NCBI GenBank assembly: GCA_020137815.1
Contig: CM035353.1
Coordinates: 5,394,001-5,458,000, forward strand
DNA: 64,000 nucleotides
From: Hormiphora californensis
Taxonomy: Eukaryota; Animalia; Ctenophora
Reading direction: 5' to 3'
The translations under genes were made by a program, and so were the position numbers. Below are positions 7,212 through 27,400 of the stretch, piece after piece. Under the pieces are notes generated by a model. It saw only the letters and a list, made by a program, of their open reading frames with translations. It ran no database searches and was not told the origin of the DNA. Within the stretch, counting starts at the first letter, position 1. Each line of letters opens with the position of its first letter.

Positions 7212-8292
7212 ATGGGTGACTCAGGGGATGCCGGGTCTGCCGCCGGTAGCGGTGGTCCTCCCATGGACGATCCTGATTTGGCTGATGCTGGTCATCTGCC
7301 CGGTTTTACCCCCTCCATTCAGTCGGTAGGTATATTGATTCTAGAATGTGCAGCAGTCATCGTCAAGTGCATTATCATTAGATTGAAAAAAGTAGATTGG
7401 TGTGTTCAGAAAGCAAGGCTACATAAATTATATACTTGACAGGTTGTAACAGTTCTTTTATACTTGCATACACAATTAACATAATCTTAGGTGGGGTGGG
7501 TATAAAAACTTTTGATGGAGTAGGACGTTCTTCATTTAAATACTCCAAAACTATTTTGTAATAATACTTGATTTTAACTTATTTCATCTTTCGCAGGAAC
7601 AAGAACCGCCTCCAGATGTAAGTAAACTCTAAATTGAGCACTGCTTAGTGAGTAGTCAAGACCACTGTATTTCACTATTTCAGTTGACTGTATAATAGTA
7701 AAGACCAATGTTTGTCTGTTTGTTCGTCTATTTGTTTGTCTGTTCGTTCGTTTCATTGAATTTATAGTTCACCTGCTATTGTGTAAAGCCTGTTTAATGA
7801 ATATAGTTTTCGACCCAATTATACATATTGATGCAGGTCATTTGTATGCTAATCAATATTATACATAGCCACTCTGGATCAGAGTAATCTCTGATCCATC
7901 TTTCTCTCTCTCCCTCACTCTCTAGAGAGAGAGAGAGAGAGAGAGAGAGATCTCCCCCTCTCTCTCTATTTAGCACAAGTCCCATGCGGTACAAACACTC
8001 ACCATTCCTTTACGACCTACAAAACATTAATTCATCTGCATATTTTGATCATCCTATCGATATGAACCAAAACCCACTTTATATTTCTGATATACCGAAG
8101 CTCATATCTTACCTATATTTTGTGTAATAATAATGCTGTCAATGCTATGTCAAAATGACGTCACGTGTAATATTAAGACCCTCTCTTAGAGGGGCACAGG
8201 TGTGAGTGAAGGCGGACAAAAGTTGTGAAAAGAATGGAGGCAATTGTGAGGGAGATCAGGACTCATGGGGAAGAGAGGGAGCCTGAGAGAGT

Positions 8293-8378
<86 letters not shown>

Positions 8379-11300
8379 GTGAGTGAGTGAGTGAGTGAGA
8401 GATCAGGGGCCGAGAGAGATCAGAGAAATAGATACAAGAAAAGAGAGGGCAAGAAAATAAGAACACGAACTTACTAACCATAAAACTTTGGCATTAAAAT
8501 TATATTTTAACCTTTGAATTGACGCATAAAATAGAGATATTTTCAGCCCGCCCCGCCCTTCGTTTGTGTAGGTATAGTGCAGATCTTACACGAGGAGCCG
8601 CCGCTTCATGTGATCGAGCTAAATGTAGTGCTTTCTCTTTCTCTATTTTTACTCTCACTCTATCTTTAATTTTCCTCGCTTTCTTTTCACTTCTTTGAAG
8701 GGACTTGTTTTTTCATCAATTGTGGGCTTTGTTTAAAGTGTGAAGCAGAGGAATGAACTCAAAAACCATAACGTGTTTGTTACAAAAGAGTTTGGCAGTT
8801 CATTGTAGTTGTTCATTGATTTCCTGCGTATTCCGCACCCCTTCATACGACGTGTAATTCAAAAGATAAAGCACTGCGCAGCCCATTGTATCACGCAGTG
8901 TTCGCTTTTGTTTACCATTTGACTTTGAGATGTCACACAATGCTTTCTTTCTTCCTCACACTAAATTTTCCCTCTGGCCCTAACTTTCCTTTGAACCGTA
9001 ATATATAAAGTTCATGTGTTGCCACGCTTGATATGAGTCTCATCTTCAATAGTTGATAGAAGTTTATGGACAACTGAGACAATTATTTATTGTGTGATTT
9101 ATTTCCTGGAATAAAATAATTGTCTCAGTTGTCCATAAACTTCTATCAACTACCGTAATATATTATGCCACAATATTCTACTACAGCTCAGCACAAATAT
9201 ATGTTTGTACTTTGAGTTAAATCCGTTTCCGCTCATTCAAATAGTGTTCAACCTCTTTTGCATATCAGAGTTCATCGTCATGTAGTTGAAACCAAAGCAT
9301 ATTTAAATGATATCACTTTCACCATAAACTAGCTCTTTCTTGATTTAAAAATTAATTTTCTACCTTTTAAATTTCTCATACTCCCCCACTGATAAAGCAT
9401 CCCAAGATCCTCATCATCCGTGTAAAATGGCTGGCTAGTGGCTAATAGCTCCACGTGATATGTCAATTGTTATTAAGGGCGGGTCACCCGCCCAAGTCGT
9501 CATGAACGATGCATACTATCCTCGCATGGAGGCCCCCATAAACCCACAATCCTGTTTTGAAAAGGTTTTCGGGGATGAACCTGTAAGTCAGTTTGTTTGT
9601 TGTTGGGGTTGCTTACTCAACAACTTGATTATGAAGTGTAGTGGTCTGTCACGTACGTTTTCTGGTTTTGTATGTACATATTGTAGCGTCAATAAAACTA
9701 TTTAGTTGTGTTAATAAAACTATTAATTAAATATCATCTATTGCAGGAGGGATACGACTACTCCTTACACTACTTCAGAGGGGATCCCGAAAAAAGGATC
9801 GGTAAGTTATGAATTCGGCCATATCATGATTGTACTAGTTGCAGAAACATAAGTACTATTACAATATCAATTTTACAGATTTTGTCCTTGTGTATCGTGA
9901 GGTCATCGAGGATATAGAGAGTTGTGGAGAGAACACCCCTATCCAGCGAACGGGCAAGGAGTTGGATGCCAAAAAGCGAAGGAGGATCTTTGAAGAAAAT
10001 CTCGAAAGAAAAGGACTTGAAATTGAACGAGTACGTAGTATGCCTTTAGAAAATTGTTGAGGTATATAGAATAAAGTTTGCTAGTCGAATAGGTCAATAT
10101 ATTTTTCTGAATTTCAACGTTTTTCAGGAAACCTATGACAAGAATGATGGTCCCGATGTCAAGCGAGTGGTGTACGTTAAGATCAACGCTAGTCGGAGGT
10201 GTCTGTTTGAGTATGCTGAGCACCTCCAGATCAAAAAGTTGTTGAAGATCGACCCTATGAAGATATTCCGTGATGAATACAAGGAGGATAGAACTTGGAG
10301 CGAGTGGAAGATCTTCTCTGGATTACACAGGTAAATCACCAATTTATTGTATCAGGCTGGAGACAGCTCCTCTCCTAGAATTGTGAAACTCAAATGTTAC
10401 ACTAGTTGTCGCCATACACAAATTTTCAAAATGTATGTTTTCAGCGGTGAAAAGTTTTACAAAGACGAAGTGTGGGACGAAATGCGTAACCACCGGATCA
10501 GCGCGAGATTTGAAGAACGAAAAGCGGACCGCTTCATAAACCACGATGAGCCTGGGTTTTTCACGACCAGCGAGCGGTCTCTCATTGTATCCTACATTTT
10601 ACAAGAGACACCATTTGAGGAGGACGGGGCACGTGGTCCAGGGGCGTCCAAGGGGGAGGTTGGAATAGAGCATCTTCTCAAGGATGACGTCTATCTATCT
10701 TGGTACCCTCTACACGATGTAAGATATGAGTTTGAAAATAAAGAATGTTTTTGCTTTGATATATTGAAGAATGAAGATGGCTTATTAAATCTTTTCTCAA
10801 TTCTCAGGGTCCTTTCCAGCTACCGTCTATCGAGGATAAACCTCCCGAGGAGAAAGTCTTCCTGAATGATCGACAAGTTTTGGGGTTATTTTGGGCCAAC
10901 TGGGGTCGGTGGGCAAAATACCAACCGCTAAACAGAGTCAGAATCTACTTTGGGGATACTATTGCCATGTACTTTGCTTGGCTTGGTAAGTTAAATAATA
11001 AGTATTCACAAAACAGTATGGTCTTGTGATCTTGGACAATAGCTATACTTTTAGAAATTCTAATCGATGGCATCTTAGGTTTTTACACTAAGCTGCTCAT
11101 TGTGCCGGCAATTGTGGGAACGCTTGTCTTCCTTTTCGACATCTGGTCTATAATCAACAATGAAGTTGTGTAAGTATTACCCTTGGATCTTCTATCATAT
11201 CTGTATAGATCCCCGCCCCCCAATATGACTCACACAAACCCACTCAACTCCAGTGGTGGTGTGTGTAAGGAGAAAACCCGTGAGGTTATCATGTGTTCAG

Positions 11301-12720
11301 CTTGTGATGGCTGTGAAGAAGATCCTTTGTGGGTTTATTGTTTTTCCACCTATGTGAGTGTCTGCACCAACATATTACATTTTAATGGACATCATGATCT
11401 GTTTAACATATCACGATAATCCATTCAGGCATCTTGTAAAATCGTTTCATATTTTTACACAAAATCCACGTTTTTTCATATTTTACGCTCACGCGGTAAC
11501 GAATAATTCCACTTTTTGGCAATTGTGTACAGCATATTTCACATGATGTGTTATTCTGTCTGTCCGTCTGTACGTTTTTCACACAGACACTAGTTCTCAA
11601 CTTTAGCCGGAGCCTTTGTGTAAGCGTTAAACATCTGTCTACACAGCACACTCACAAATGCTTACACCATAGAGCACATTGTGCGTGTACTATAAAGGCA
11701 TTGTGCGTATACATAAAGTCATTGCCCAAACAATGAGCGTTCGTCTAATGTCCAGTAAGTAAAGTATAAGTATTGTCTACTAAGTAAAATCAAATTAGAC
11801 AGCTCGGTCTGAACCTTAGTTTTCAGCGACTGTGGTTCCCCAAAGGTTTAAGGGCTAAATTGCTCCAACCTGACCTTCGAACGACTGTTTTCCCACAGTC
11901 CGTAAAGGAGGTTTAGAACCGTACATGGCTATGTTATAACAATGAAACATGTCTCAGTGATTCAGTGTGCCAGGAGGAGGTCGAACACAGCAGGGCCACA
12001 GCCCAGATGTGCAAAGAGTGTAAAGACTGTGCCACATACACTCTCAATGACATTTGCCTCTTGTTTACAGTAAGAATAGAGCTTGTGTGGAATGTATAAC
12101 ACTATGCTGAACTTGTGTGGAATGTATAACACTATGCTGAACTTGTGTGGAATGTATAACACTATGCTGAACTTGTGTGGAATGTATAACACTATGCTGA
12201 ACTTGTGTACACTAGGAGTTCTTCGTGCGAATTCTCGATGATTAAATGGAAATTCTGAGAGCTTCTAAATCAATTACTTAATACCTCGCATGGCTAATGC
12301 ATATCCTTTGATTAACAACTTCTTTTTTTTGTATAGCCTGCTGCTGAAGCATCCTAAGTATATACAGTCGGACCCTTATAATTTACCAGGCAAATCTCTT
12401 TCCTCCGATCCTGGTAAATCAGGGTCCGACTGTTATAATACATGTGCACATTGCTATAATACACCTCTAGACACTAAACAATTACTAACCTACTAATCCC
12501 CTTCAGATATCCAATGCCTTCAATAATGGAGCGTCTGTCTTTTACGCAGTGTTCATCTCCTTCTGGTGTGAGTAAATTTAATAAGCCATGGCATAATAGT
12601 AAAAACAGCATAAGAAATCTATGGCCTTAATTGCTCCAAAATCTGAAACCTAAGTTGTAATATTGCTCTCCTATTCTAGCGGCATTCTTCCTTGAGTTTT
12701 CTGGAAGATCGTAAACAGTT
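7212..12720 (+). CDS. ANO: Anoctamin (TMEM16) family gene, N-terminal half (cytosolic domain, TM1, TM2)
   Basis: Core exons 9747-9801, 9879-10030, 10128-10330, 10445-10718, 10808-10985, 11079-11169, [11254-11353 or 11958-12069], 12507-12567, 12680-~12720. Family motifs: [108 protein letters not shown](WKRKQ, frameshifted). Candidate first exons: 5878-5919, 7212-7325 (+7597-7617), 9460-9582. Confidence 0.95.
11254..11353 (+). CDS. ANO: Anoctamin extracellular TM1-TM2 loop exon, variant A
   Basis: ctccag|...|gtgagt, 100 nt, phase 2 in and phase 0 out; encodes GGVCKEKTREVIMCSACDGCEEDPLWVYCFSTY. Confidence 0.85.
11958..12069 (+). CDS. ANO: Anoctamin extracellular TM1-TM2 loop exon, variant B
   Basis: tctcag|...|gtaaga, 112 nt, phase 2 in and phase 0 out; encodes DSVCQEEVEHSRATAQMCKECKDCATYTLNDICLLFT. 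Same five-Cys pattern as variant A. Confidence 0.85.
12082..12208 (+). repeat. 30-bp tandem repeat, about 4 copies (CTTGTGTGGAATGTATAACACTATGCTGAA)
   Basis: Identical head-to-tail units with no spacers, starting about 12 nt after the exon-B donor. Confidence 0.95.
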
Positions 12721-12759
12721 TAGACATTTCGCCATTTTACCAGTTCCTGAACAAACCGG

Positions 12760-14824
12760 CATTTCTCAACCAATTTCAAAATCTGGGCCATTAGAAAGTA
12801 ATATCACTTCTTTTCCAAAGAGCTATATCCCCCAATCCTAAAAACCTTACACACGCACGTGCACGCCTAAACCCCACCAACACCCCTAACAACATGCCAA
12901 TTTTCCACGTGCAAGCCGACCTGCCATGACCATGACCATGACCATGACCATGACCATTGACCATGACCATGACCATGACCATGACATGACCATGACCATG
13001 ACCATGACCATGACCATGACCATGACCATGACCATGACCAATGACCATGACCATGGACCATGCACCATGACCATGACCATGACCATGGACCATGACCATG
13101 ACCATGACCATGACCATGACCATGACCATGACCATGACCATGACCATGACCATGACCATGACCATGGGACCATGACCATGACCATGACCATGACCATGAC
13201 CATGACCATGACCATGACCATGACCATGACCCCATGTGACCATGACCATTGACCATGACCATGAACCATGACCATCCATGACCATGACCATGACCATGAC
13301 CATGACCATGAGACCATGACCGACCATGACCATGACCATGACCATGGATTTGCTATAAATCTTGTGGTGCATTTCTTTTTTGTTTCTACATTCTGAAAGT
13401 ATTACAGTTAACTTACTATAGTACACACATTTACTAAATACTGATCATATAACTCGTTATCTATAATGTTACCCCATGTCATTATAATGCCGGTCTCAAG
13501 GCTTTTGTTTTTTCTCATTCTGTACAGCCAATGTTTAAAACATATATCACGTCCTTTACGCTACACCGCCAATCTTATATCGTCTCCACATGCACTTAAT
13601 AAACGCGACCCTTCTTCTACTTTCCTTCATTATTAGTAGGGCCTTGTTGTGGTATTGATTCTTCTTGACTTGTATTATACCTGTTATAAGGAGATGCTAA
13701 AATAATCACATGACCTGGTAAGTAAGCGATTCAATTTTTATTTTAAAACCACCGACCACCGAAAAGCAAAACAATATCACATATATATGTGTATGACTTT
13801 ACACGAAAGCATGTTTATACGGAGCTAATTTGTCTATATAAACTCGACAGTAATAATCCTGACAGCAAATATCCCGGTGACTGGTGAGAATTGTAAATTA
13901 TACTATGACAAGCAATCGCAATATAGCTACAGCCGCGTATATATGTGATTTATCCGGTCCTTCAAGCAAAATTACAATTCATACATGATGTTGACTATAA
14001 TACTAGGTCGTCAGACAATACTATATCGTCTAAGAAGTAAGAATGACAGTTCTGCTTGAAATAATAGGATAATCAAAATGATAATTGATTCTCATGATAG
14101 TATATTTATCATGACTTTAATCCATGCTCAGACCCGTCATCGTCTCAGTTTTTTGCATCTTAACAAGCAAGTTATATCGATACAGCGCATCGTTTAAAAT
14201 CATCATGTTGAGTGATCCTACAAGCCTATAATGCTAATGTCACACTTGATTTACCTAGCTCTAGATTAGAAATGCAGGCTTCCTATAGTTTTTCATTTTT
14301 CATGGCCTATAGAAGGTTCTGTCAGCCGACTATCGTGATATGTCGTTGTTAGGCAAAGGGAGATTCTATATATAGTTGCTATTGGTTATTGGTACTGTTA
14401 ATTACAGAGGGCTATCAGGCATGTTTGATTGTTTGCTGAAGATATGTTTACCACAAAGTTGCTATAGATAATTGTGTGCATAGTCTTGATATTGCCGTCC
14501 AATTGAAAGATCTTGTTCATCATTTGTTCTGCCTGACAAGTTGGTAAACCTGATGATGACGCTATGTATGATTCCACGTAATATGACTGGTGTGTAGATG
14601 ATGTTATATATGGTCGATGAAAGATGATTGGTGGACGCGGTGATTCTTGATGACTTGTAGATATATACTGATGCTTATGAACTGTGGGCACCATTGAACA
14701 CGTCCATTTGTAGCGCATCAATAAAAACCACCATCAAAAAATTATTTTGCATGCAGCCAGAGAGAAGAAAAAAAGAGAAGGAATGAGAGAAAGAGAGACA
14801 TAGAGAAGAGATAGAAATAGAGAG

Positions 14825-14856
<32 letters not shown>

Positions 14857-17800
14857 ATCAGAGAGAGAGATACAAAATAAAAGAGTCGAATCGAGAGGAG
14901 AGAATCGTGATGAGTTAATATTCATTCAATACGCGCGGTCTTTGTTTATTCGCGTGGGAGCTATATCACTCCACAGAGGGTGTTTGTTATCATCTGAGAG
15001 ATCAATACAGCTAGATAATCATCCTTCAAAAGGTAAACCCAAATAGGATGATTGGTTTCCCGTCAGGGATTCCATAAAAACATGTGTTGCGTCCTAAATA
15101 CAGCTTTATTATTTCGTTGAAATCCATGGTATAGATCTGTGTTGTTTGGTGCCAGTATAATAGCAGCTGGTAACAAGGAAATTGAAGTTGTGATGGAGTT
15201 TCAATTAAAATAGTGGTCAAAGACCGAATTGTTATAGCCAAGTTGTAATCACCAATTATTGAACAATTATAATGATTGTGATAGTGAGAAAGTTTTGTTT
15301 TCCGGCTGGACAAAATGAGTAGACGGGGTTTTTATGGCCTGGTTCTCTACAATAAAAAAGATCCTTATTATCTGATTGTGATAGTATATTACAGTGTTTA
15401 TGGTACTTTACGGCTTTTCCGTAACCCACCTTCCCAAATAAAAGGTCAAAGAGTGTCATACTCATGTAAGTATATAACAACAATATAGTTTTATATGTAC
15501 ATGATTATATAACATAATAAGCATAGCCAATAATTAATATTAATTCATTCGAACGTCCGGGCGAGTGCTTTTGCAAAGGGCATAAGGGTTTAAATGCAAT
15601 AGGTGGCAGATAGACCTATTAATTGCCATAAAACCTACTCCAACACCTGATAGTAGACCTCTGAATCATTGAGATAAGGATCCTTATCTTTCACTACTGT
15701 AAATCAGACACTGAGTTTGATTTACAGTAGTGACAGATATTTTAAATTTGAATGTTTGTGTTGCTAACTTGCACAGTTTGTTCACAGGAGCTTAAATCAA
15801 GGTGTTTTGGTTCGTCCTTATCGGGCCATTTTACCCCTCAAAGATCACATTTGCATCGTGTAGAGCGTAGACGCTGGAAATGTGACCTTTGAGGCAACAA
15901 ATTACCTATTATGGTGAATTAGTAACTCATATAAAGCATATAAGACATTCAAATCGCTTATCTGTCTCCCCTGAAAAATCTCCAATTCAAATGAATGAAA
16001 TTGGATAGAAGTCGGACAAAACTACACTTGATCCCCATTGAAACAACTAACACATTTTAACTGACACAATATATAGATTGCTCTCACACTCATTTCTCCT
16101 CACGTGATAACTGAGCTGCACTTAAACCGCATTGTAAAACGTGCTTGTAATGGAGAATTGGCTGAATTCTGACCTCTGTGAAGCCCCTCTTTCTTTTTAA
16201 CAGCAGCGATTTGACCACTGAAATCTACACGCTACTCCATCTTTCTGATTCCTTTCACTTCATTTCTCTCTAGGCAAATTTGTAATAACTGCATAGCAAA
16301 TATTTCACATGATTTAATCCATGATTCCTATAATGTAGTCTTCAAAGTAACTTTTATCGAAGACTGGACCAGCTATAGGCGATACATATCACATCGTCAC
16401 AGTTTTTAATATCTTCCCACTGAGCTCTGTGATGATCGCACTTTTATGTTCATCTTTTTATCTTTTTCTACCTCCTTTCGATTTGTTCCGTTCGCTACAC
16501 TGTACGCATGTAGAAATACGGTAGTATGCACCAGCTCTGACTCTTCACCATATAATTCATGAATCAATATATCATTATTTGTTAATTTGGTATAGCTAGC
16601 TGAATATTTCCCATCATAAATCACCATCCCAATTGCTAAGTAGTATGGTAGTGTTTGTCACCACGTGACCATGCCAGAATCTGTAATATTGCCTCCCATT
16701 TCCGCGAGGGAGTAGTCGCACGCAAGTAAGTCGCGTTAGTATGGTAGGAGTGTGAAATGTAAGGAGTGTGAAATATGAGGAGTGTAAATGTAAGGAGTGT
16801 GAAATGTAAGGAGTGTGAAATATGAGGAGTGTAAATGTAAGAGAGTGTAAAATGTAAGGAGTGTGAAATGTGAGGAGTGCGAAATTTGAGGAGTGCGAAA
16901 TGTAGGAGTGGTAAATGTTAGGAGTTTGAAATATGAGGAGTGTAAAATGTAAGGATTGTGAAATGTGATGATTGCGAAATTGAGGAGTTTGAAATGTAAG
17001 GAGGGTAAAATGTAAGGATTGTGAAATGTATAAAGGTGTGTAAAATGTAAGGAGTGTGAATGTGAGAAGTTTGAAATATGAGAAGGCTGTAAAAGTTGGG
17101 TATAGGTCATCAATTACACACATTCCTATGATAGCTCGGTTCACCTGAACTCAACCCACTCAGGAAAGAAGCGGAGGGATGTTGGAGATCTCGAGACCAC
17201 ACGGGAACCACAATGCGCAAAAAGAAGAGGCTGAAAAGCGGAAGAAAGCGAAGTTGTTGAAGAAATTGAAAGAACAGGAAGCCTAGTGAATGCCAACAAC
17301 AGGTTAGGAAGTAACCTGGTAAAATTTTGATAATAAAGTCGAACCCCGATTTACCGGAGGATAAACTATCCCCGATATAGAAAATGAACAGTGTTTCACC
17401 CCGATATAACCGGGCACCCTTAGTAAACACGTCGAGTCGGTAAGTTGCATTTACAAATTTTTAAATGCAACTTACCGACTCGACGTGACTAGGGACAGGA
17501 CGGGATGCGAATTGCTCAGCGTTTAGCTAAGTAACAAAAAGAAGGTATGCAGCAGCTGCATACTATGTCACCATATACTTCCGGCTATTTGAAACGTGAT
17601 TCGTGGTTTGGCTTCTTTCAGCTAATCTTTAGGCAGCATGTTTTTGACTAGTTGCGGTTGCTTGAGAGCGTGATCACAATGTTTAAAAACTTGTAACACC
17701 AGCAAAAGTGTAAACTTGTAAAACTCTCTCTGAAGAGAGATAGACTGTATATAGAGGCGTATCATTATATCACGAAAGTTTGAGAAGTAAGATAGTGAGG

Positions 17801-18296
17801 GGGAGTAGAGTACGAAAAGCATCATGCTTTCGATCTATACGAACACTCTCAGCTGCTACGCGTATCAGTTTCATCGTATCGTTAGACTTTAGTCCTGACT
17901 AACTGTCCTAGGTAAATTGTGTTTGATTTAAATAATTCAGTTGTGACTTATTACCAACTAGAGAGCCCAGGCAAAAGAACAAAAAACTCTCACACCCTAT
18001 TGACTCCTCTCAATCCCGATTCCTGGCACCTCCGGTCGCGAGATCATACTCCACGCCCCTTTCCCCTGTTGACTCCCCTCAGTCTCCTCACCCCTCTATC
18101 CTCCTCGGCCCTCTTATCCCTATTGACTCCCCTCGGCCCCTATGAATCATATAGTCCCCTATTCACTATCTCACCCTCTATCACTCCCCTATAACGCCAT
18201 AAGGAACACTCCCTAACCCCTCTCTCAATCTGTGATCTGAAGCAGTTCAGAACCCCACATTTTCCCTCATTTTTCACCATTTCCCCCATAACTCAG
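12760..18296 (+). repeat. Error-rich duplicate of 20543-26243, occupying the middle of the anoctamin gene
   Basis: 13346-18296 is colinear with 21081-26076. 12760-12920 matches 26078-26243. The (GACCAT)n tract at 12925-13345 is noisy, whereas the one at 20543-21080 is perfect. Coding exons in this copy are frameshifted. Confidence 0.93.
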
Positions 18297-18399
18297 GTCA
18301 TTATCTAAGACTGTATATGTCGGGAAAAACGAAGACTTTCAAAACTACACATTACATTTGATTTAAATCATGTTCTTGACTCTAAATACGGATTTTCAG

Positions 18400-19044
18400 C
18401 ACTTTGTGTTCACTGTTGTTCGATGTATTGACTTGCTGATACCGGATGTGCCTGAAAAAGCTGGAAGCCCTCATACACCTTGAGGACAGCTTCGCTAGGG
18501 AAATGATGAAAGAGGTCATCGAGGTATGTGACATGATATGTTTCTCATCATATCAGCTTCACTAGCTCAGTTTACTGGTAATATCATTCTTCACATTTCA
18601 TCAACTGTGCAGCTGTCTTTATCTTTACAGGAAGGCGCAGTTAATATTCGACCAAAACCAAAGAAACGATTGCCATTTGTAGTCCCACCTACAAAGCGCA
18701 AACACAAATGAATTAGACTTGATCATGTAGGGATCAATTCACAGCTTAAATTATCATAGCATATATATCACGTTTCATTGAAAGATTCTCAACATGAACT
18801 CACGCCATAAAACTTTTAATTTTAATAAGCATGCAATCTTAATAGTATTTATTATAAACATTTGTATACCCGAAAATTCACATGCATTTATTCATATTCC
18901 CATCGGAAAGTTCAGCGCATGTACTGTTTTTTACCGTTGACATCATATGAACATCAACATTACTTTCAGGTCGATCTAGAGCAACTAGAGGACATGCGAC
19001 ATCGAATTGAAGTGAAGAGAAAACAACGGAATAAATATGCTTAG
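18400..19044 (+). CDS. ANO: Anoctamin C-terminal exons with two candidate alternative last exons
   Basis: 18400-18523 encodes HFVFTVVRCIDLLIPDVPEKLEALIHLEDSFAREMMKEVIE (post-TM10 IPDVP motif; one extra A in a homopolymer run). Phase-0 terminal exons: 18631-18711 (EGAVNIRPKPKKRLPFVVPPTKRKHK*) and 18970-19044 (VDLEQLEDMRHRIEVKRKQRNKYA*). Confidence 0.85.
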
Positions 19045-20542
19045 ATAAAGTGGAAATAATTGAATAATCAAGAACTGAAGTCGATCCTTGGCATCCTACT
19101 CATAGTTTTCATAATTTCATCTTAAATACACCTATACGAATAGTAATGGATGACTTGTCGGTATATTGGAAATATTTTATCAATTTGGTAATAATTATAA
19201 AATGTAAGCTAACTACATATACATTATAATTATGTATATGTTACTGGGTTTGTAGACTTCTGAAATTCCTCTTTACAGTTTTACTTTGAGTAGACATTTC
19301 ATCTTAAATGCATGGACCTTTGTAAAAACCTGTGAAGTTAGCTGAATAAAATGATGTGTTTCTTCGAGAGAGTTTTTTGTGAATGTACCATCTTTGCCCA
19401 GGGCTGGCCCAAAACCGACCATATAATATGGTATGTTATATCAATGTTGGAAAATGTATAAATTCTCTTTAACATAAATTTAGAATTTGGAAATTTGAAT
19501 CAGTTTGCAGAAATTAAGAGTTTTGTAGTTTGCATTGTTGTTTTAGTGTGTATGTTTTGTTTTTAATTCAATACACCCCAAACATGCGGAATATTTTATT
19601 GATTAACATTTAAATCTAAATTCAAACCTCGATTTACCAAAACCAGAACCTCGATTTCCCCATTCCTCGAACAGAGGAATTTCCCCAATCCCCATTGTAT
19701 ATAGTATTTAACACTAATATCGGTACACATCGGTCGAGGTACGGTTGGAGCTCGACTTACCGTGTAAAACCCTTCCAGAAGGAGCCTGATGGATGGTGGC
19801 TTAAGGCTTAACTCTCTCAAAATATATCCACATGGCTCTCAAGTCCTCAAGTATATTACACATAGGACTTGTTTTGAAAAGTCAAGTTTGATCAACATGC
19901 ATATTGAATATAGTGGCCAGTGAACGTTGCTGATTCTACATTCGAGAAACCGTTTACCGTGCCTCAAAATATACTCTTGTGGTCCACAAGAATATATTTC
20001 GAAGCTCGGCTCAATGTGCAGCTGCTAACCTCATACCGTTCTACAACTCATCTCTAGGAGCTAAGTTTTCCGCGAGCTTAATAACCTTATATATTCCCCC
20101 TCCATAGCTTAATCCTTGATCGGCGAGAGTGTTACACGGCAAAAACCTTTTATTAAACGCTGATATCCGATAATGTGTAGTTGATTGATCAATATAGATC
20201 GATATATGCTGCACATTTAAACGATATATCGCATTATATGGTGCATTGATGCAAGTGAAAAAAGTCGCGGCAAATCTCGATAGAGAAAGTGGTGTTATAA
20301 ATTGGTTTATAACATTGCATGGTATAGTATGCAGTACGTTATAAAAATTACATAGCGGCTGAAGTGGTTTATAAATTTAATGTTATTCTTCCGAATAATA
20401 GTTATATAGAGCTTAATATAATTGTACACACATATATATCCAGATTCTGTCTGGCGCCGCGACCCCGTCTTAGCGCACTGTCGATTTGAATCAAAAGGGG
20501 GTCTGGCGCCGCCAGACAGCCATCATTAGTGAAGATGGTCTC

Positions 20543-21080
20543 CATGACCATGACCATGACCATGACCATGACCATGACCATGACCATGACCATGACCATG
20601 ACCATGACCATGACCATGACCATGACCATGACCATGACCATGACCATGACCATGACCATGACCATGACCATGACCATGACCATGACCATGACCATGACCA
20701 TGACCATGACCATGACCATGACCATGACCATGACCATGACCATGACCATGACCATGACCATGACCATGACCATGACCATGACCATGACCATGACCATGAC
20801 CATGACCATGACCATGACCATGACCATGACCATGACCATGACCATGACCATGACCATGACCATGACCATGACCATGACCATGACCATGACCATGACCATG
20901 ACCATGACCATGACCATGACCATGACCATGACCATGACCATGACCATGACCATGACCATGACCATGACCATGACCATGACCATGACCATGACCATGACCA
21001 TGACCATGACCATGACCATGACCATGACCATGACCATGACCATGACCATGACCATGACCATGACCATGACCATGACCATG
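20543..21080 (+). repeat. (GACCAT)n microsatellite, about 90 perfect units
   Basis: Directly visible; source of the MT/DH/WS/VM pseudo-ORFs. Confidence 0.98.
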
Positions 21081-22532
21081 GATTTGCTATAAATCTGTGG
21101 TGCATTTCTTTTTTTGTTTCTACATTCTGAAAGTATTACAGTTAACTTACTATAGTACACACATTTACTAAATACTGATCATATAACTCGTTTTATCTAT
21201 AATGTTACCCCATGTCATTATAATGCCGGTCTCAAGGCTTTTGTTTTTTCTCATTCTGTACAGCCAATGTTTAAAACATATATCACGTCCTTTACGCTAC
21301 ACCGCCAATCTATATATCGTCTCCACATGCACTTAATAAACGCGACCCTTCTTCTACTTTCCTTCACTTATTAGTAGGGCCTTGTTTGTGGTATTGATTC
21401 TTCTTGACTTGTATTATACCTGTTATAATGGAGATGCTAAAATAATCACATGACCTGGTAAGTAAGCGATTCAATTTTTATTTTAAAACCACCGACCACC
21501 GAAAAGCAAAACAATATCACATATATATGTGTATGACTTTATCACGAAAGCATGTTTATACGGAGCTAATTTGTCTATATAAACTCGACAGTAATAATCC
21601 TGACCAGCAACTATCACGGTGACTGGTGAGAATTGTAAATTATACTATGACAAGCAATCGCAATATAGCTACAGCCGTATATATATGTGATTTATCGGGT
21701 CCTTCAAGCAAAATTACAATTCATACATGATGTTGACTACTAGGTCGTCAGGCAATACTATATCGTCTAAGAAGTAAGAATGACAGTTCTGCTTGAAATG
21801 ATAGGATAATCAAAATAATAATTGATTCTCATGATAGTATATTTATCATGACTTTAATCCATGCTCAGACCCGTCATAGTCAGTTTTTATGCATCTTAAC
21901 AAGCAAGTTATATCGATACAGCGCATCGTTTAAAATCATCATGTTGAGTGATCCTACAAGCCTATAATGCTAATGTCACACTTGATTTACCTAGCTCTAG
22001 ATTAGAAATGCAGGCTTTCTATAGTTTTTCATTTTTCATGGCCTATAGAAGGTACAGCTGTCAGCCGACTATCGTGATATGTCGTTGTTAGGCAAAGGGA
22101 GATTCTATGGTTACTATTGGTTATTGGTACAATTAATTACAGAGCGCTATCAGGCATGTTTGATTGTTTGCTGAAGACATGTTTACCCCAAAGTTGCTAT
22201 AGATAATTGTGCGTATAGTCTTGATATTGTCGTACAATTGAAAGATCTTGTTCATCATTTGTTCTGCCTGACAAGTTGGTAAACCTCCATCATGATGACG
22301 CTATATATGATTCCACGTAATATGAATGGCTGGTGTGTAGATGATGTTATAGGTGGTCGATGAAAGATGATTGGTGGACGCGGTGATTCTTGATGACTTG
22401 TAGATATATACTGATGCTTATGAACTGTGGGCACCATTGAACACGTCCATTTGTAGCGCATCAAATAAAAACCATCCATCAAAAAATTATTTTTGCATGC
22501 AGCCAGAGAGAGAAGAAAAAAAGAGAAGGAAT

Positions 22533-22606
<74 letters not shown>

Positions 22607-24426
22607 AGAGAGAGAGATACAAAATAAAAGAGTCGAATCGAGAAGGAGAGAATCGTGATGAGTTAATTATTCATTCAATACGCTGCGGTCTTTGTTTATT
22701 CGCGTGGGAGCTATATCACTCCACAAGAGGTGTTTGTTATCATCTGAGAGATCAATACAGCTAGATAATCATCCTTCAAAAGGTAAACCCAAATTAGGAT
22801 GATTGGTTTCCCGTCAGGGATTCCATAAAACATGTGTTGCGTCCTAAATACAGCTTTATTATTTCGTTGTAAATCCATGGTATAGATCTGTGTTGTTTGG
22901 TGTCCAGTATAATAGCAGCTGGTAACAAGGAATATTGAAGTTGTGATGGAGTTTCAATATAAAATAGTGGTCAAAGACAGAATTGTTATAGCCAAGCTTG
23001 TAATCACCAATTATTGATACAATTATAATGATTGTGATAGTGAGAAAGTTTTGTTTTCCGGCTGGACAAAATGAGTAGACGGGGTTTTTATGGCCTGGTT
23101 CTTCTACAATAAAAAAGATCCTTATTATCTGATTGTGATAGTATTATACAGTGTTTATGGTACTTTACGGCTTTTCCGTAACCCACCTTCCCAAAATAAA
23201 AGGTCAAAGACGTGTCATACTCATGTAAGTATATAACAACAATATAGTTTTATATGTACATGATTATATATACATAATAAGCATAGCCAATAATTAATAT
23301 TAATTCATTCGAACGTCCGGGCGAGTGCTTTTGCAAAAGGGCATAAGGGTTTAAATAGCAATAGGTGGCAGATAGACCTATTTAATTGCCATAAAACCTA
23401 CTCCAACACTGATAGTAGACCTCTGAACTCATTTGAGATAAGGATCCTTATCTTTCACTACTGTAAATCAGAACTCGAGTTCTGATTTACAGTAGTGACA
23501 GATATTTTAAATTTGAATGTTTTGTGTTGCTAACTTGCACAGTTTGTTCACAGGATCGTTAAATCAAGGTGTTTTGATTCGTCCTTATTGGGCCATTTTA
23601 CCCCTCAAAGATCACATTTGCATCGTGTAGAGCGTAGACGCTGGAAATGTGACCTTTGAGGCAACAAATTACCTAATTATGGTGAATTAGTAACTCATAT
23701 AAAGCATATAAGACATTCAAAATCGTCTTATCTGTCTCCCCTGAAAAATCTCCAATTCAAATGAATGAAATTGGATAGAAGTCGGACAAAACTACACTTG
23801 ATCCCCATTGAAACAACTAACACATTTTAACTGACACAATATATAGATTGCTCTCACACTCATTTCTCCTCACGTGATAACTGAGCTGCACTTAAACCGC
23901 ATTGTAACGTGCTTGTAATGGAGAATTGGCTGAATTCTGACCTCTGTGAAGCCCTTCTTTTTTAACAGCAGCGATTTGACCACTGAAATCTACACGCTAC
24001 TCCATCTTTCTGATTCCTTTCACTTCATTTCTCTCTAGGCAAATTTGTAATAACTGCATAGCAAATATTTCACATGATTCCTATAATGTAGTCTTCAAAG
24101 TAACTTTTATCGAAGACTGGACCAGCTATAGGCGATACATATCACATCGTCACAGTTTTTAATATCTTCCCACTGAAGCTCTGTGATGCATCGCACTTTT
24201 ATTGTTCATCTTTTTATCTTTTTCTACCTCCTTTCGATTTGTTCCGTTCGCTACACTGTTACGCATGTAGAAATACGGTAGTATGCACCAGCTCTGACTC
24301 TTCACCATATAATTCATGAATCAATATATCATTATTTGTTAATTTGGTATAGCTAGCTGAATATTTCCCATCATAAATCACCATCCCAATTGCTAAGTAG
24401 TATGGTAGTGTTGTCACCACGTGACC

Positions 24427-27400
24427 ATGCCAGAATCTGTAATATTGCCTCCCATTTCCCGCGAGGGAGTAGTCGCACGCAAGTAAGTCGCGTAGTCATG
24501 GTAGGAGTGTGAAATGTAAGGAGTGTGAAATATGAGGAGTGTAAAATGTAAGGAGTGTGAAATGTAAGGAGTGTGAAATATGAGGAGTGTAAAATGTAAG
24601 GAGTGTAAAATGTAAGGAGTGTGAAATGTGAGGAGTGCGAAATTTGAGGAGTGCGAAATGTAAGGAGTGTAAAATGTTAGGAGTTTGAAATATGAGGAGT
24701 GTAAAATGTAAGGATTGTGAAATGTGATGATTGCGAAATGTGAGGAGTTTGAAATGTAAGGAGTGTAAAATGTAAGGATTGTGAAATGTATAAAGGTGTG
24801 TAAAATGTAAGGAGTGTGAAATGTGAGAAGTTTGAAATATGAGAAGGCTGTAAAAGTTGGGTATAGGTCATCAATTACACACATTCCTATGATAGCTCGG
24901 TGTCACCTGAACTCAACCCACCTCAGGAAAGAAGGCGGAGGGATGTTGGAGATCTCCGAGAACACCACCGGGAACCACAATGCGCAAAAAGAAGAGGCTG
25001 AAAAGCGGAAGAAAGCGAAGTTGTTGAAGAAATTGAAAGAACAGGAAGGCCTAGTGAATGCCAACAAACAGGTTAGGAAGTACACCTGGTAAAATTTTGA
25101 TAATAAAGTCGAACCCCGATTTACCGGGAGGATAAACTATCCCCGATATAGAAAATGAACAGTGTTTCACCCCGATATACCGGGCACCCTTAGTAAACAC
25201 GTCGAGTCGGTAAGTTGCATTTACAAATTTTTAAATGCAACTTACCGACTCGACGTGACTAGGGACAGGACGGGATGCGAATTGCTCAGCGTTTAGCTAA
25301 GTAACAAAAAAGAAGGTATGCAGCAGCTGCATACATAGTCACCATATCACTTCCGGCTATTTGAAACGTGATTCGTGGTTTGGCTTCTTTCAGCTAATCT
25401 TTAGGCAGCATGTTTTGACTAGTTGCGGTTGCTTGAGAGCGTGATCACAATGTTTAAAAACTTGTACACCAGCAAAAGTGTAAACTTGTAAAACTCTCTC
25501 TGAAGAGAGATAGACTGTATATAGAGGCGTATCATTATATCACGAAAGTTTGAGAAAGTAAGATAGTGAGGGGGAGTAGAGTACGGAAAAGCATCATGCT
25601 TTCGATCTTATACGGAACACTCTCAGCTGCTACGCGTATCAGTTTCATCTGTATCGTTAGACTTTAGTCCTGACTAACTGTCCTAGGTAAATTGTGTTTG
25701 ATTTAAATAATTCAGTTGTGACTTATTACCAACTAGAGAGCCCAGGCAAAAGAACAAAAAACTCTCACACCCTATTGACTCCTCTCAATCCCGATTCCTG
25801 GCACCTCCGGTCGCGAGATCATACTCCACGCCCCTTTCCCCCTGTTGACTCCCCTCAGTCCTCACCCCTCTTATCCTCCTCGGCCCTCTTATCCCTATTG
25901 ACTCCCCTCGGCCCCTATTGAATCATATAGTCCCCTATTCACTCCATCTCACCCTCTATTCACTCCCCTATAACGCCATAAGGAACACTTCCCTAACCCC
26001 TCTCTCAATCTGTGATCTGAAGCAGTTCAGAACCCCACATTTTCCCTCATTTTTCACCATTTCCCCCATAACTCAGTCATTTCTCAACCAATTTCAAAAT
26101 ACCAAGGCTCATTGGAAAGATAATCTCAACCTCTTTCCAAAGAGCTATAATCCCCCAAATTTATAAAACCTTTACACACGCACGTGCACTCCCCAAGCCC
26201 CACCAACCACCCCTAACAACATGTCAATTTTCCACGTGCAAGCCCTAAAAACCCCCTCCCCCAAATTTTGTCTTGCAAGGTTCTCTGCTTTATAATATAG
26301 ATACGCGGCTCTTTTTTCAGGTTATGGTGAGAGACCGAAGAAGACCTAGGAAGAATATTAAAGAGATGAGCGTACTAAATAAGCGTCGGCGTGTCATCAA
26401 AAACACCGCTAGAAAAGAGATAGCCCAACAGAGAGCCACTCTGGAGAGTATGCGGCACATTGGTGAGTAACTAAACGTTTCTTTTCGGGCCACAGTCCTC
26501 ACATTGCTGATTTCATTGTCCTTACATTTCACTTTCCACTTCTGACATTTCATTTCACACTCCTTACATTTCACGCTCCTCACATTTCACACTCCTCACA
26601 TTTCACACTCCTCACATTTCACACTCCTTACATTTCACACTCCTTACATTTCACACTCCTTACATTTCACAATCCTTACATTTCACACTCCTCACATTTC
26701 ACACTCCTTGCACATTTTACACTCCTCACATTTCACACTCCTCACACATCATATCCTTGATATTTCATTAAGTTTCTTCAGATTTCTCATATTCCACCAT
26801 CCCCATTCCTCGTATCTACCACCATATTCCTCAGAAATGAAGAGTCACTCCTCACATTTATCCATTTCATATTCCTCAGAAATGAAGCGTCACTCCCTGG
26901 AAGCGAGAGAGTTGGAAGTGTTTGTCGAACGGATCAGGAAGGTGAAGCAGAATAAGCGTCTATCCATGCTCTTTGCCAAGTTCCAATTTAGCCCCGTGTC
27001 TGAGGAAGAGGATGAGGGGTATAGCGATCACCATGGAGACCAGGGAGAGGAAGAACAGGACGTATGTAAACATGTTCATAGTACAAAGAATACAAATTGC
27101 CTAGGTGCATATTCTGTCTCTGTCACGTTCTAAACTTTCGTGAACCAGCTCACATTTTCAGGATGGGAACGACGGGGCGACTGTGACTTCCACCAGCACC
27201 CTAGGCACGGATAAGAATAACAAATCAGAGAGCATGAACAGGTGAAATAAAATGCAGCCAAATCTGGTAGGATGTGTCATTGTTGTTGTATTTCTTGGCC
27301 CTGGGGCGCTGTGATAAAAATTCTGCTTCCTAATTTTGATTCCTTCAGGCTGATCACGGAGTTGAACAGCATGTCCCTGATCATAGACTACGATTCCAAC

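What the first reader, a model, noticed from the sequence alone, without database searches (positions are those of the whole stretch)
11254..12069. Mutually exclusive duplicated exons encode the anoctamin Cys-rich extracellular loop
Seen: two exons between TM1 and TM2 with identical phases (2 in, 0 out) and lengths of 100 and 112 nt (both 3n+1). Both keep VC...MCxxCxxC-x8-C with almost no other identity. Splicing A to B gives an immediate TGA, and skipping both shifts the frame, so exactly one must be used. Established: this loop carries the conserved disulfide-forming cysteines of TMEM16 proteins. Inference: old, selectively maintained swappable ectodomains. I do not recall this splicing mode at this position in described anoctamins.
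Basis: partly seen in the sequence, partly recalled or inferred. Interest (0 to 1): 0.85.

Follow-up and report, generated by a model that had tools for sequence, protein, structure and literature searches.

The report
Swappable cysteine-loop exons, comb-jelly anoctamin
A comb-jelly gene for a TMEM16/anoctamin membrane protein has two old, intact, interchangeable exons for its disulfide-stapled outer loop, and transcripts of related comb jellies carry one or the other, so one gene makes two versions of the protein's outside face.

Summary
Exons A (11254-11353, 100 nt) and B (11958-12069, 112 nt) lie between the TM1 and TM2 exons of an anoctamin gene on the + strand. Both have AG/GT sites, enter in phase 2 and leave in phase 0, and keep five cysteines in register. 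A joined to B opens with TGA, and skipping both shifts the frame.

- **This species:** one metatranscriptome contig shows the joint 12069>12507 (B to the TM2 exon). Exon A had no coverage.
- **Mnemiopsis:** two transcripts are 100% identical over about 830 residues except for this cassette, one A-type and one B-type.
- **Other relatives:** three more ctenophore mRNAs carry A-type (one) or B-type (two).
- **Selection:** synonymous sites are saturated, while pN is 0.24 (A), 0.43-0.45 (B) and 0.13 (flanks).
- **Structure:** the five cysteines fall on family-invariant columns and align to mouse TMEM16A C370, C379, C382, C386 and C395.

Caveat: this assembly lacks the exons for residues ~418-831 of the gene.

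No paper describes this exon pair. The scan has not met it on other DNA, but its unchecked notes list other mutually exclusive exon (MXE) pairs in this genome (CNG, BK, PKA). I class it as a new member of a known kind.

The parts
7224..7331 (+). Early coding exon (N-terminal region, ...GHLPGFTPS...), one of the alternative 5' ends seen in relatives
   Evidence: Pleurobrachia model P0025, residues 47-83, 89% identity; N-termini compared
9747..9800 (+). Coding exon (EGYDYSLHYF...)
   Evidence: tblastn of the L015 ORF
9878..10030 (+). Coding exon, Anoct_dimer domain
   Evidence: RNA joint 10030>10128 in runs X1 and X2; Pfam PF16178
10128..10327 (+). Coding exon, Anoct_dimer domain (3' end ambiguous by 3 nt)
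   Evidence: Joints 10030>10128 and 10327>10442
10442..10718 (+). Coding exon, Anoct_dimer domain (92 codons)
   Evidence: Joints; PF16178 at 63.5 bits
10808..10985 (+). Coding exon: end of the dimer domain and start of the Anoctamin domain (...YFAWLG)
   Evidence: Joints 10718>10808 and 10984/5>11078/9
11079..11169 (+). TM1 exon, ends in phase 2 (GT|)
11254..11353 (+). Cassette exon A (33 aa + 1 nt). The conserved type, 58-76% identical to the A-type of L015 and Mnemiopsis
   Evidence: No RNA coverage in this species
11958..12069 (+). Cassette exon B (37 aa + 1 nt). The fast-evolving type; begins TGA in A's outgoing frame
   Evidence: joint 12069>12507 in one X1 contig
12079..12228 (.). 30-nt unit repeated about 4.5 times, starting 10 nt after exon B's donor; role unknown
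   Evidence: family D1
12507..12567 (+). TM2 exon ([20 protein letters not shown])
   Evidence: Joints 12069>12507 and 12567>12680
12680..12700 (+). Start of the next exon (SAFFLEF...). The genome departs from the transcript after 12700
   Evidence: loose end of 164 nt reading WKRYQITLAF...
12707..12917 (.). Copy of a high-copy interspersed repeat of about 230 bp that abuts the cut exon
   Evidence: 148 candidates, 80-88% identity, all chromosomes
12918..18306 (.). 5.4-kb segment duplicated locally at 20660-26084 (96% identity); holds no anoctamin exon
18394..18526 (+). C-terminal coding exons (TM10 end ...LIPDVPEK / KLEALIHLEDSFAREMMKEVIE)
18967..19041 (+). Last coding exon (...KRKQRNKYA)

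Best explanation
Exons A and B are a tandem-duplicated, mutually exclusive pair in a ctenophore anoctamin gene that RefSeq labels 'anoctamin-7-like' in Bolinopsis. Each exon encodes a complete version of the extracellular TM1-TM2 loop.

By homology with mouse TMEM16A, the loop is a small module held by two internal disulfides (Cys1-Cys5 and Cys3-Cys4). A third disulfide ties it from Cys2 to the conserved cysteine of the TM9-TM10 loop.

Splicing joins the TM1 exon to A or to B, and then to the TM2 exon. Because both exons are 3n+1 long, mRNAs with both (immediate TGA) or neither (frameshift) cannot encode the protein. Only single-cassette mRNAs are productive.

The result is two proteins with the same membrane core and cytosolic parts but a different outer face of about 24-28 residues. 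A-type is short and well conserved. B-type is four to five residues longer, evolves fast, and in three of four species carries an N-glycosylation sequon.

- **Shown:** the exon anatomy; use of B's donor; A-only and B-only transcripts of one gene in Mnemiopsis; conservation of both types.
- **Inferred:** use of A in this species; the disulfide pattern; any functional difference; nonsense-mediated decay of the wrong combinations.
For: - Anatomy, phases and the stop codon.
- Joint 12069>12507 (GT..AG) in metatranscriptome X1. Four other contigs of X1/X2 match the gene's upstream exons at 99-100% with correct joints.
- Each cassette occurs once in the genome, so there is no paralogue with either loop.
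- Mnemiopsis: P0095 (A-type) and P0094 (B-type, same loop and flanking sequence as KAL5252618.1) are identical at 840 of 868 aligned positions. All 28 differences lie inside the cassette, whose limits coincide with the window's exon limits.
- L015 mRNA carries A-type. L013 (whose loop is identical to Bolinopsis microptera XP_063678304) and L014 carry B-type.
- A-type identity between species is 19-25 of 33. B-type is 9-14 of about 36.
- pN is 0.24 (A) and 0.43-0.45 (B), against pS of 0.84-1.08, which is saturated. Flanks have pN 0.13.
- In a 25-protein animal alignment all five cassette cysteines, and the TM9-10 partner, are invariant columns in both isoforms.
- The cysteines align to mTMEM16A C370/C379/C382/C386/C395 and C836. 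Disulfide pairs are from PMC12067253.
- AlphaFold models of both Mnemiopsis isoforms give the same helix-loop-helix layout around the cassette. Block pLDDT is 67-78 for A and 58-77 for B.
Against: - No read or contig covers exon A in the window's species. The only RNA evidence for B is one contig with 33 nt on the B side, from an environmental sample.
- Relatives were available as transcripts or proteins only, so the tandem A-B arrangement is shown for this genome alone.
- RefSeq's three Bolinopsis isoforms all carry B-type.
- B-type cassettes are so divergent that their orthology rests on position, length and cysteine spacing.
- The assembly's copy of the gene lacks residues ~418-831. As assembled, this locus cannot encode a channel.
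Confidence: 0.85

Rival explanations
1. In the window's species only B is used. A would be an inherited exon that is no longer spliced in: still intact, but silent.
For: One search shows zero coverage of 11198-11946. The only cassette joint seen is B's. The Bolinopsis RefSeq isoforms are all B-type.
Against: - Coverage was a handful of low-depth contigs, and the TM1-exon contig stops 24 nt before the exon's end, so absence means little.
- A has an open frame, good AG/GT sites and all five cysteines.
- A has the lower non-synonymous divergence of the two (pN 0.24 against a saturated pS). A long-silent exon should have decayed.
- A-type is expressed in Mnemiopsis and in the L015 species.
Confidence: 0.08
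2. The locus as assembled is a truncated, non-functional allele or partial copy. The cassette pair would then be an ancestral feature preserved in a gene that is broken here, between the exon at 12680 and the C-terminal exons at 18394.
For: - tblastn of the L015 ORF finds residues 41-409 and 832-898 in the window but nothing for 410-831.
- Whole-genome searches with L015's middle part and with Pleurobrachia P0025 find only paralogues at 51% identity or less.
- The transcript's continuation is absent from the window and the genome.
- A high-copy repeat abuts the cut exon at about 12707, followed by a local 5.4-kb duplication.
Against: - The upstream exons are intact, and RNA contigs match them at 99-100% with correct splicing.
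- One contig runs from B through the TM2 exon into the missing part, so an intact copy exists in the population or the individual.
- A collapse or misjoin in a repeat-rich stretch of the assembly explains the gap equally well.
- Either way the MXE anatomy stands.
Confidence: 0.2
3. The A-type and B-type transcripts of relatives come from two paralogous genes, or from chimeric transcript assemblies, rather than from alternative splicing.
For: Relatives were seen only as assembled transcripts or proteins. P0095 and P0094 also differ in their first ~40 residues.
Against: - P0095 and P0094 are 100% identical over about 830 residues outside the cassette. Paralogues old enough to differ by 70% in the loop would not be.
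- The N-terminal difference matches the alternative first exons annotated for one Bolinopsis gene (isoforms X2 and X3).
- In this genome both cassettes sit 604 nt apart in one gene, and neither occurs elsewhere.
- The A-type segments of three species are mutually orthologous.
Confidence: 0.02

Closest known systems
Mutually exclusive tandem-duplicated exons in ion-channel genes (for example CaV1.2 exons 8/8a; Tang et al. 2011, cited in PMC12592175)
   Same: Adjacent homologous exons with the same phase. One is chosen per transcript, which swaps a defined structural module while the rest of the protein stays constant.
   Different: A different gene family and a different module: here an extracellular disulfide-stapled loop, not a transmembrane segment. 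Here the frame alone (3n+1 lengths, immediate TGA) makes double inclusion or double skipping unproductive. No regulator is known.
Amphioxus 'anoctamin-4-like' RefSeq isoforms with alternative TM1 exons (for example XP_035662313 vs XP_035662314)
   Same: Same protein family. An equal-length (44 aa) swap of one exon-sized segment directly upstream of the cysteine loop, seen in three Branchiostoma annotations.
   Different: The segment swapped is TM1 and the end of the pre-TM1 helix, not the cysteine loop. The loop is single in all listed amphioxus isoforms. These are predicted models only, in a different lineage, so this is an independent event.
Vertebrate ANO1/TMEM16A alternative segments a, b, c and d (from my own knowledge, not tested here)
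   Same: Alternative splicing is used to diversify one anoctamin gene.
   Different: Those are an alternative start and skipped or included cassette exons on the cytosolic side, which alter Ca2+ and voltage sensitivity. None replaces the extracellular TM1-TM2 loop, and none is a mutually exclusive pair.
Other MXE pairs that this scan noted in the same genome (CNG channel s1-874580, BK channel s1-870257, PKA s1-870263)
   Same: Same genome and same architecture of two tandem, intact, same-phase exons. Several are in channel genes.
   Different: Different genes and modules. Those notes are AI notes that I did not check.

Membership tests
Anoctamin / TMEM16 | N-terminal Anoct_dimer domain (PF16178) followed by the Anoctamin domain (PF04547) | tested here: met
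   Window exons hit PF16178 positions 10-48, 53-98, 114-187 and 194-221 in genomic order (up to 63.5 bits). They then hit PF04547 positions 1-16 and 18-38, at 17 bits each, below the cut-off because the exons are short. Orthologue L015: PF04547 at 468 bits and PF16178 at 162 bits; E 2e-128 to solved Anoctamin-6 and Anoctamin-1.
Anoctamin / TMEM16 | A complete ten-helix membrane core encoded at the locus | tested here: not met
   In this assembly residues ~418-831 (TM3 to most of TM10) are missing from the window and from the whole genome. Orthologues in other ctenophores have the core. A transcript contig continues into it.
Anoctamin / TMEM16 | Five conserved cysteines of the TM1-TM2 loop, plus the partner cysteine in the TM9-TM10 loop | tested here: met
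   Both cassette types place their five cysteines on invariant columns of a 25-protein animal alignment. They align to mTMEM16A C370/C379/C382/C386/C395. The partner aligns to C836. Formation of the disulfides themselves is not testable here.
Mutually exclusive exons (tandem duplicates) | Adjacent exons that are homologous to each other | tested here: met
   The exons are 604 nt apart. The protein alignment score is about 4.4 sd above shuffles, and DNA is 51% identical with 0 of 1000 shuffles reaching it. In a short tree the ctenophore A and B loops group apart from other animals' loops (88/94, weak).
Mutually exclusive exons (tandem duplicates) | Same entry and exit phase; including both or neither destroys the frame | tested here: met
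   100 and 112 nt, phase 2 in and 0 out. A followed by B reads TGA at once. Skipping both gives a frameshift.
Mutually exclusive exons (tandem duplicates) | Transcripts carry one or the other, otherwise identical | tested here: met
   Shown for Mnemiopsis: P0095 and P0094 are identical except in the cassette. For the window's species it is inconclusive, since only the B-to-TM2 joint was seen in one contig.
Mutually exclusive exons (tandem duplicates) | Both copies kept under selection in related species | tested here: met
   A-type occurs in three taxa and B-type in four. pN is 0.24 and 0.43-0.45 against saturated pS. Frames, lengths and cysteines are kept.
Mutually exclusive exons (tandem duplicates) | A known mechanism that enforces exclusivity before translation (steric hindrance, U2/U12 incompatibility, or docking/selector RNA pairing) | tested here: inconclusive
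   The A-B intron is 604 nt, so there is no steric hindrance. All sites are GT-AG of the U2 type. No convincing long-range pairing was found, and no relatives' introns were available to test for conservation. The frame rule is the only safeguard shown.

The most novel reading that the evidence does not exclude
The two cassettes define two physiologically distinct anoctamins made from one gene since before the split of the pleurobrachiid and lobate comb jellies. One is a conserved, unglycosylated A form. The other is a fast-evolving, usually N-glycosylated B form, whose outer face may be under diversifying pressure from a partner, the matrix or a pathogen. Cassette choice may be coupled to the alternative first exons and to cell type. 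This would be one instance of a genome-wide ctenophore habit of diversifying channels by exon duplication rather than by gene duplication.
Probability: 0.3. Interest if true: 0.7.

Novelty: new member of a known kind. Interest (0 to 1): 0.55.

Why it matters
The extracellular domain of TMEM16 proteins is the least understood part of the family. Here evolution has run a clean loop-swap experiment and kept both outcomes across deep ctenophore divergences. All five structural cysteines are fixed while almost everything between them is free to differ.

Expressing the two Mnemiopsis isoforms would test directly whether the TM1-TM2 loop affects gating, permeation, scrambling, trafficking or partner binding.

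The finding also adds a well-supported case to the sparse record of mutually exclusive splicing in ctenophores. It bears on how an early-branching animal lineage with compact genomes diversifies its channels.

Tried and rejected
- **Single cassettes against the PDB:** nothing meaningful.
- **Own-genome search for A- or B-like loops:** only self matches, so no paralogue has either loop.
- **The search for homologous proteins with the open frames around A and B:** no candidates, because of the length window.
- **The search of protein representatives with the 92-aa exon:** only 15 hits, mostly short fragments. Useful only as a lead that marine metagenomes hold ctenophore DNA.
- **The look-up of encoding contigs:** I therefore could not fetch genomic loci of Bolinopsis, Mnemiopsis or the metagenome fragments, and the tandem arrangement in relatives stays untested.
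- **JGI scan with exon A:** the exon alone was too short for the tool. Its open frame found no relative. The scan with the conserved upstream exon succeeded.
- **Distant anoctamins and paralogues as probes for downstream exons:** found only one C-terminal exon. The close orthologue then showed that the core is truly absent.
- **The 30 nt with which the transcript continues:** not in the window or the genome.
- **Docking/selector RNA pairing:** no convincing pair.
- **A third cassette:** none in the window.
- **Bacterial promoter/terminator scan:** irrelevant to this eukaryotic locus.
- **MXE at this loop in other phyla:** not seen in the listed isoforms of amphioxus, Patiria, Lineus, Ciona, Clavelina or Acropora. 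At most 15 members per cluster were listed.
- Exons were searched one by one, by reference. The only concatenation was of three in-frame flanking exons inside a local script, to count substitutions.
Full report
**What is in the sequence**

The window is G000:C4:5394001-5458000 of a 110.7-Mb, 45-contig assembly.

My own results agree with that. The window's exons are 85-94% identical to a Pleurobrachia bachei (EukProt) anoctamin model. The assembly's size fits the published Hormiphora californensis assembly, which is 110 Mb in 44 scaffolds (PMC8527503). The species name is my inference and was not tested.

An anoctamin gene runs on the + strand. RNA contigs from two marine metatranscriptomes (X1, X2) match it at 99-100% and confirm the joints 10030>10128, 10327>10442, 10718>10808 and 10984>11078. 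The exons hit Pfam Anoct_dimer positions 10-221 in order, and then the first 38 positions of the Anoctamin model.

**The two exons**

The TM1 exon ends at 11169 with two bases of a valine codon.

- Exon A (11254-11353, 100 nt) and exon B (11958-12069, 112 nt) both start with the T that completes that codon, and both end on a codon boundary.
- Both have AG acceptors and GT donors. Each is open in one frame only.
- A encodes 33 residues and B encodes 37.
- Both have cysteines spaced C-x9/13-C-x2-C-x2-C-x8-C.
- B begins TGA in the frame that A leaves, so A+B stops at once. Skipping both frameshifts the 61-nt TM2 exon (12507-12567).

The two exons are clearly related but old. Only 9 of 33 residues are identical, yet the alignment score lies about 4.4 sd above shuffles. 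DNA is 51% identical, with 0 of 1000 shuffles as good.

On the + strand the cysteine pattern occurs nowhere else in the window; the scan's only other hit is one unrelated match on the - strand. Each cassette occurs only once in the genome.

**RNA evidence in this species**

The reads tools allowed one search and one laying. Only three runs were offered, all held as contigs.

One X1 contig (281 nt) joins exon B to the TM2 exon exactly at 12069>12507 (GT..AG, 33 nt on the B side). It then joins 12567>12680 and runs on for 164 nt that read WKRYQITLAF..., the expected anoctamin continuation.

Exon A has no coverage at all. However, coverage is a handful of short contigs, and the TM1-exon contig ends 24 nt before the exon's end. 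This says nothing against A. In this species B is shown to be spliced, and A is untested.

**Evidence from relatives**

A scan of JGI metagenome contigs with the conserved exon 10808-10984 returned three contigs of about 3 kb (L013, L014, L015). These are spliced, near full-length mRNAs of orthologues from three different ctenophores, 76-78% identical in that exon.

- L015 carries an A-type cassette of 33 aa, with 19 of 33 residues identical to the window's A.
- L013 and L014 carry B-type cassettes of 38 and 37 aa.

A protein search seeded with L015 found the RefSeq 'anoctamin-7-like' isoforms of Bolinopsis microptera. All three are B-type, and their loop is identical to that of L013. It also found a cluster of Mnemiopsis sequences.

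Within that cluster, P0094 is B-type and has the same loop and flanking sequence as M. leidyi KAL5252618.1. P0095 is A-type, from a transcript assembled from a public run. The two are identical at 840 of 868 aligned positions, and all 28 differences fall inside the cassette. The cassette's edges are exactly the window's exon edges.

That is the signature of mutually exclusive splicing of one gene in a second, distantly related ctenophore. The two transcripts also differ in their first ~40 residues. These match the alternative first exons annotated for the Bolinopsis gene.

**Selection**

Between the window and the three mRNAs, synonymous sites are saturated (pS 0.79-1.08). The proportion of non-synonymous differences is as follows:

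| Segment | pN |
|---|---|
| Flanking constitutive exons | 0.13 |
| Cassette A | 0.24 |
| Cassette B | 0.43-0.45 |

An unused exon would have drifted towards about 0.75 and lost its frame. Both cassettes are therefore maintained, A more strictly than B.

A-types are 58-76% identical between species. B-types are only 25-40% identical, and are recognisable by position, length and the longer Cys1-Cys2 spacer.

A tree of the 31-38-residue loops is weak. It does group the three A-types together (93/100). It also groups all the ctenophore loops apart from other animals' loops (88/94). This fits a duplication within the ctenophore stem, before the sampled species diverged.

**What the cassette is in the protein**

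Segments of L015 (A-type) and L014 (B-type) align to mouse Anoctamin-1 structures with E about 1e-32. Their five cysteines sit on C370, C379, C382, C386 and C395.

In mouse TMEM16A the disulfides are C370-C395, C382-C386 and C379-C836 (PMC12067253). The C836 partner in the TM9-TM10 loop is conserved in the ctenophore proteins.

In a 25-protein alignment across animals, all five cassette cysteines and the partner are invariant columns, whichever isoform leads the alignment.

AlphaFold models of both Mnemiopsis isoforms (mean pLDDT 70-71) show the same layout. TM1 extends as a helix to Cys1, followed by an irregular stretch, and then a helix from about Cys5 into TM2. Confidence is somewhat lower for B than for A.

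By inference, each cassette is a self-contained, doubly stapled module pinned to the TM9-10 loop. Swapping it changes the exposed residues while keeping the scaffold.

Read directly from the sequences, three of the four B-types (not the window's own) have an N-x-S/T sequon between Cys1 and Cys2, as mouse TMEM16A does. None of the three A-types has one.

**How exclusivity works**

The frame rule is shown. The other known mechanisms are not supported:

- The A-B intron is 604 nt, which is too long for steric hindrance.
- All splice sites are GT-AG of the U2 type.
- I found no convincing long-range RNA pairing.

Both cassettes have purine- or A/C-rich acceptor regions that are weaker than those of the constitutive neighbours, as regulated exons often do. 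A 30-nt unit repeated about 4.5 times starts 10 nt after B's donor. Its role is unknown.

**A caveat that goes beyond the finding**

After the short exon piece at 12680-12700, the genome departs from the transcript. Three lines of evidence show that the middle of the gene is missing from the assembly:

- The close orthologue's ORF finds residues 41-409 and 832-898 in the window, and nothing for 410-831 on either strand.
- Whole-genome searches with that middle part, and with the Pleurobrachia model, hit only paralogues at 51% identity or less.
- The transcript's next 30 nt occur nowhere in the assembly.

The layout of the gap is as follows.

- A copy of a high-copy repeat of about 230 bp begins at about 12707.
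- After it come microsatellites and a 5.4-kb segment (12918-18306).
- That segment is repeated at 20660-26084 at 96% identity.
- The C-terminal exons (18394-18526 and 18967-19041) lie between the two copies.

Either the assembly is collapsed here, or the sequenced haplotype carries a deletion allele. The RNA contig shows that an intact copy exists. This does not touch the anatomy of the cassette pair. It does mean that the locus as assembled cannot encode a working protein.

**Comparison with what is known**

Five full-text searches found no description of mutually exclusive exons in any anoctamin, and nothing on ctenophore anoctamins.

Among the listed RefSeq and other isoforms of amphioxus, a starfish, a nemertean, two tunicates and corals, the loop is single. 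Amphioxus 'anoctamin-4-like' models do show an equal-length swap of the neighbouring TM1 exon. MXE-type splicing in the family is therefore not unique to ctenophores, though at this position it appears to be.

The scan's own unchecked notes list other MXE pairs in this genome, in CNG, BK and PKA genes.

**Limits of this work**

**Verdict**

The pair is real, old, selectively maintained and mutually exclusive. It is a new member of a known kind.

Noticed in passing
window 12700-26244: The anoctamin gene is interrupted in this assembly. The exon at 12680 is cut at about 12700. A high-copy repeat of about 230 bp follows (12707-12917), and a diverged copy of it lies at 26078-26244. A 5.4-kb segment (12918-18306) is duplicated at 20660-26084 (96% identity). 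The exons for residues ~418-831 are absent from the whole assembly, although a transcript contig contains their start. This is either a misassembly or a deletion allele.
   Followed up: partly
window 12079-12228: A 30-nt unit (GAACTTGTGTGGAATGTATAACACTATGCT) is repeated about 4.5 times head to tail, starting 10 nt downstream of exon B's donor. It is a possible intronic splicing element or simply a minisatellite. Conservation could not be tested.
   Followed up: no
P0094/P0095 (Mnemiopsis); P0020/P0091/P0093 (Bolinopsis); window 7224-7331: The orthologues have at least two or three alternative first coding exons (MSDSDVF...GHLSGFTPS... versus MSVRGSPEQ...). In the two Mnemiopsis transcripts the A-type cassette goes with the first kind and the B-type with the second. 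With one transcript each, no coupling can be claimed.
   Followed up: partly
P0104 vs P0107, P0100 vs P0112, P0115 vs P0117 (Branchiostoma RefSeq): Amphioxus 'anoctamin-4-like' isoforms differ by an equal-length 44-aa swap covering the end of the pre-TM1 helix and TM1. This is an MXE-like pair next to, but not at, the cysteine loop.
   Followed up: partly
window 12364-12433, also 774-1031 and 1646-1831: A short inverted-repeat element (arms ACAGTCGGACCC.../...GGGTCCGACTGT, 94% complementary) lies in the intron after exon B. The same motif recurs elsewhere in the window, so it is probably a MITE-like repeat.
   Followed up: no
window 15048-15120: A stretch of about 72 nt inside the 5.4-kb duplicated segment matches dozens of places on all chromosomes at 89-97% identity. 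It is a short interspersed repeat of unknown kind.
   Followed up: no
G000:C1:6892817-6894247, C7:1954589-1956058, C6:937869-939122: Several other anoctamin-family genes in this genome have long intron-free open frames of 650-771 aa covering the whole Pfam domain. The window's gene, by contrast, is split into many short exons.
   Followed up: no
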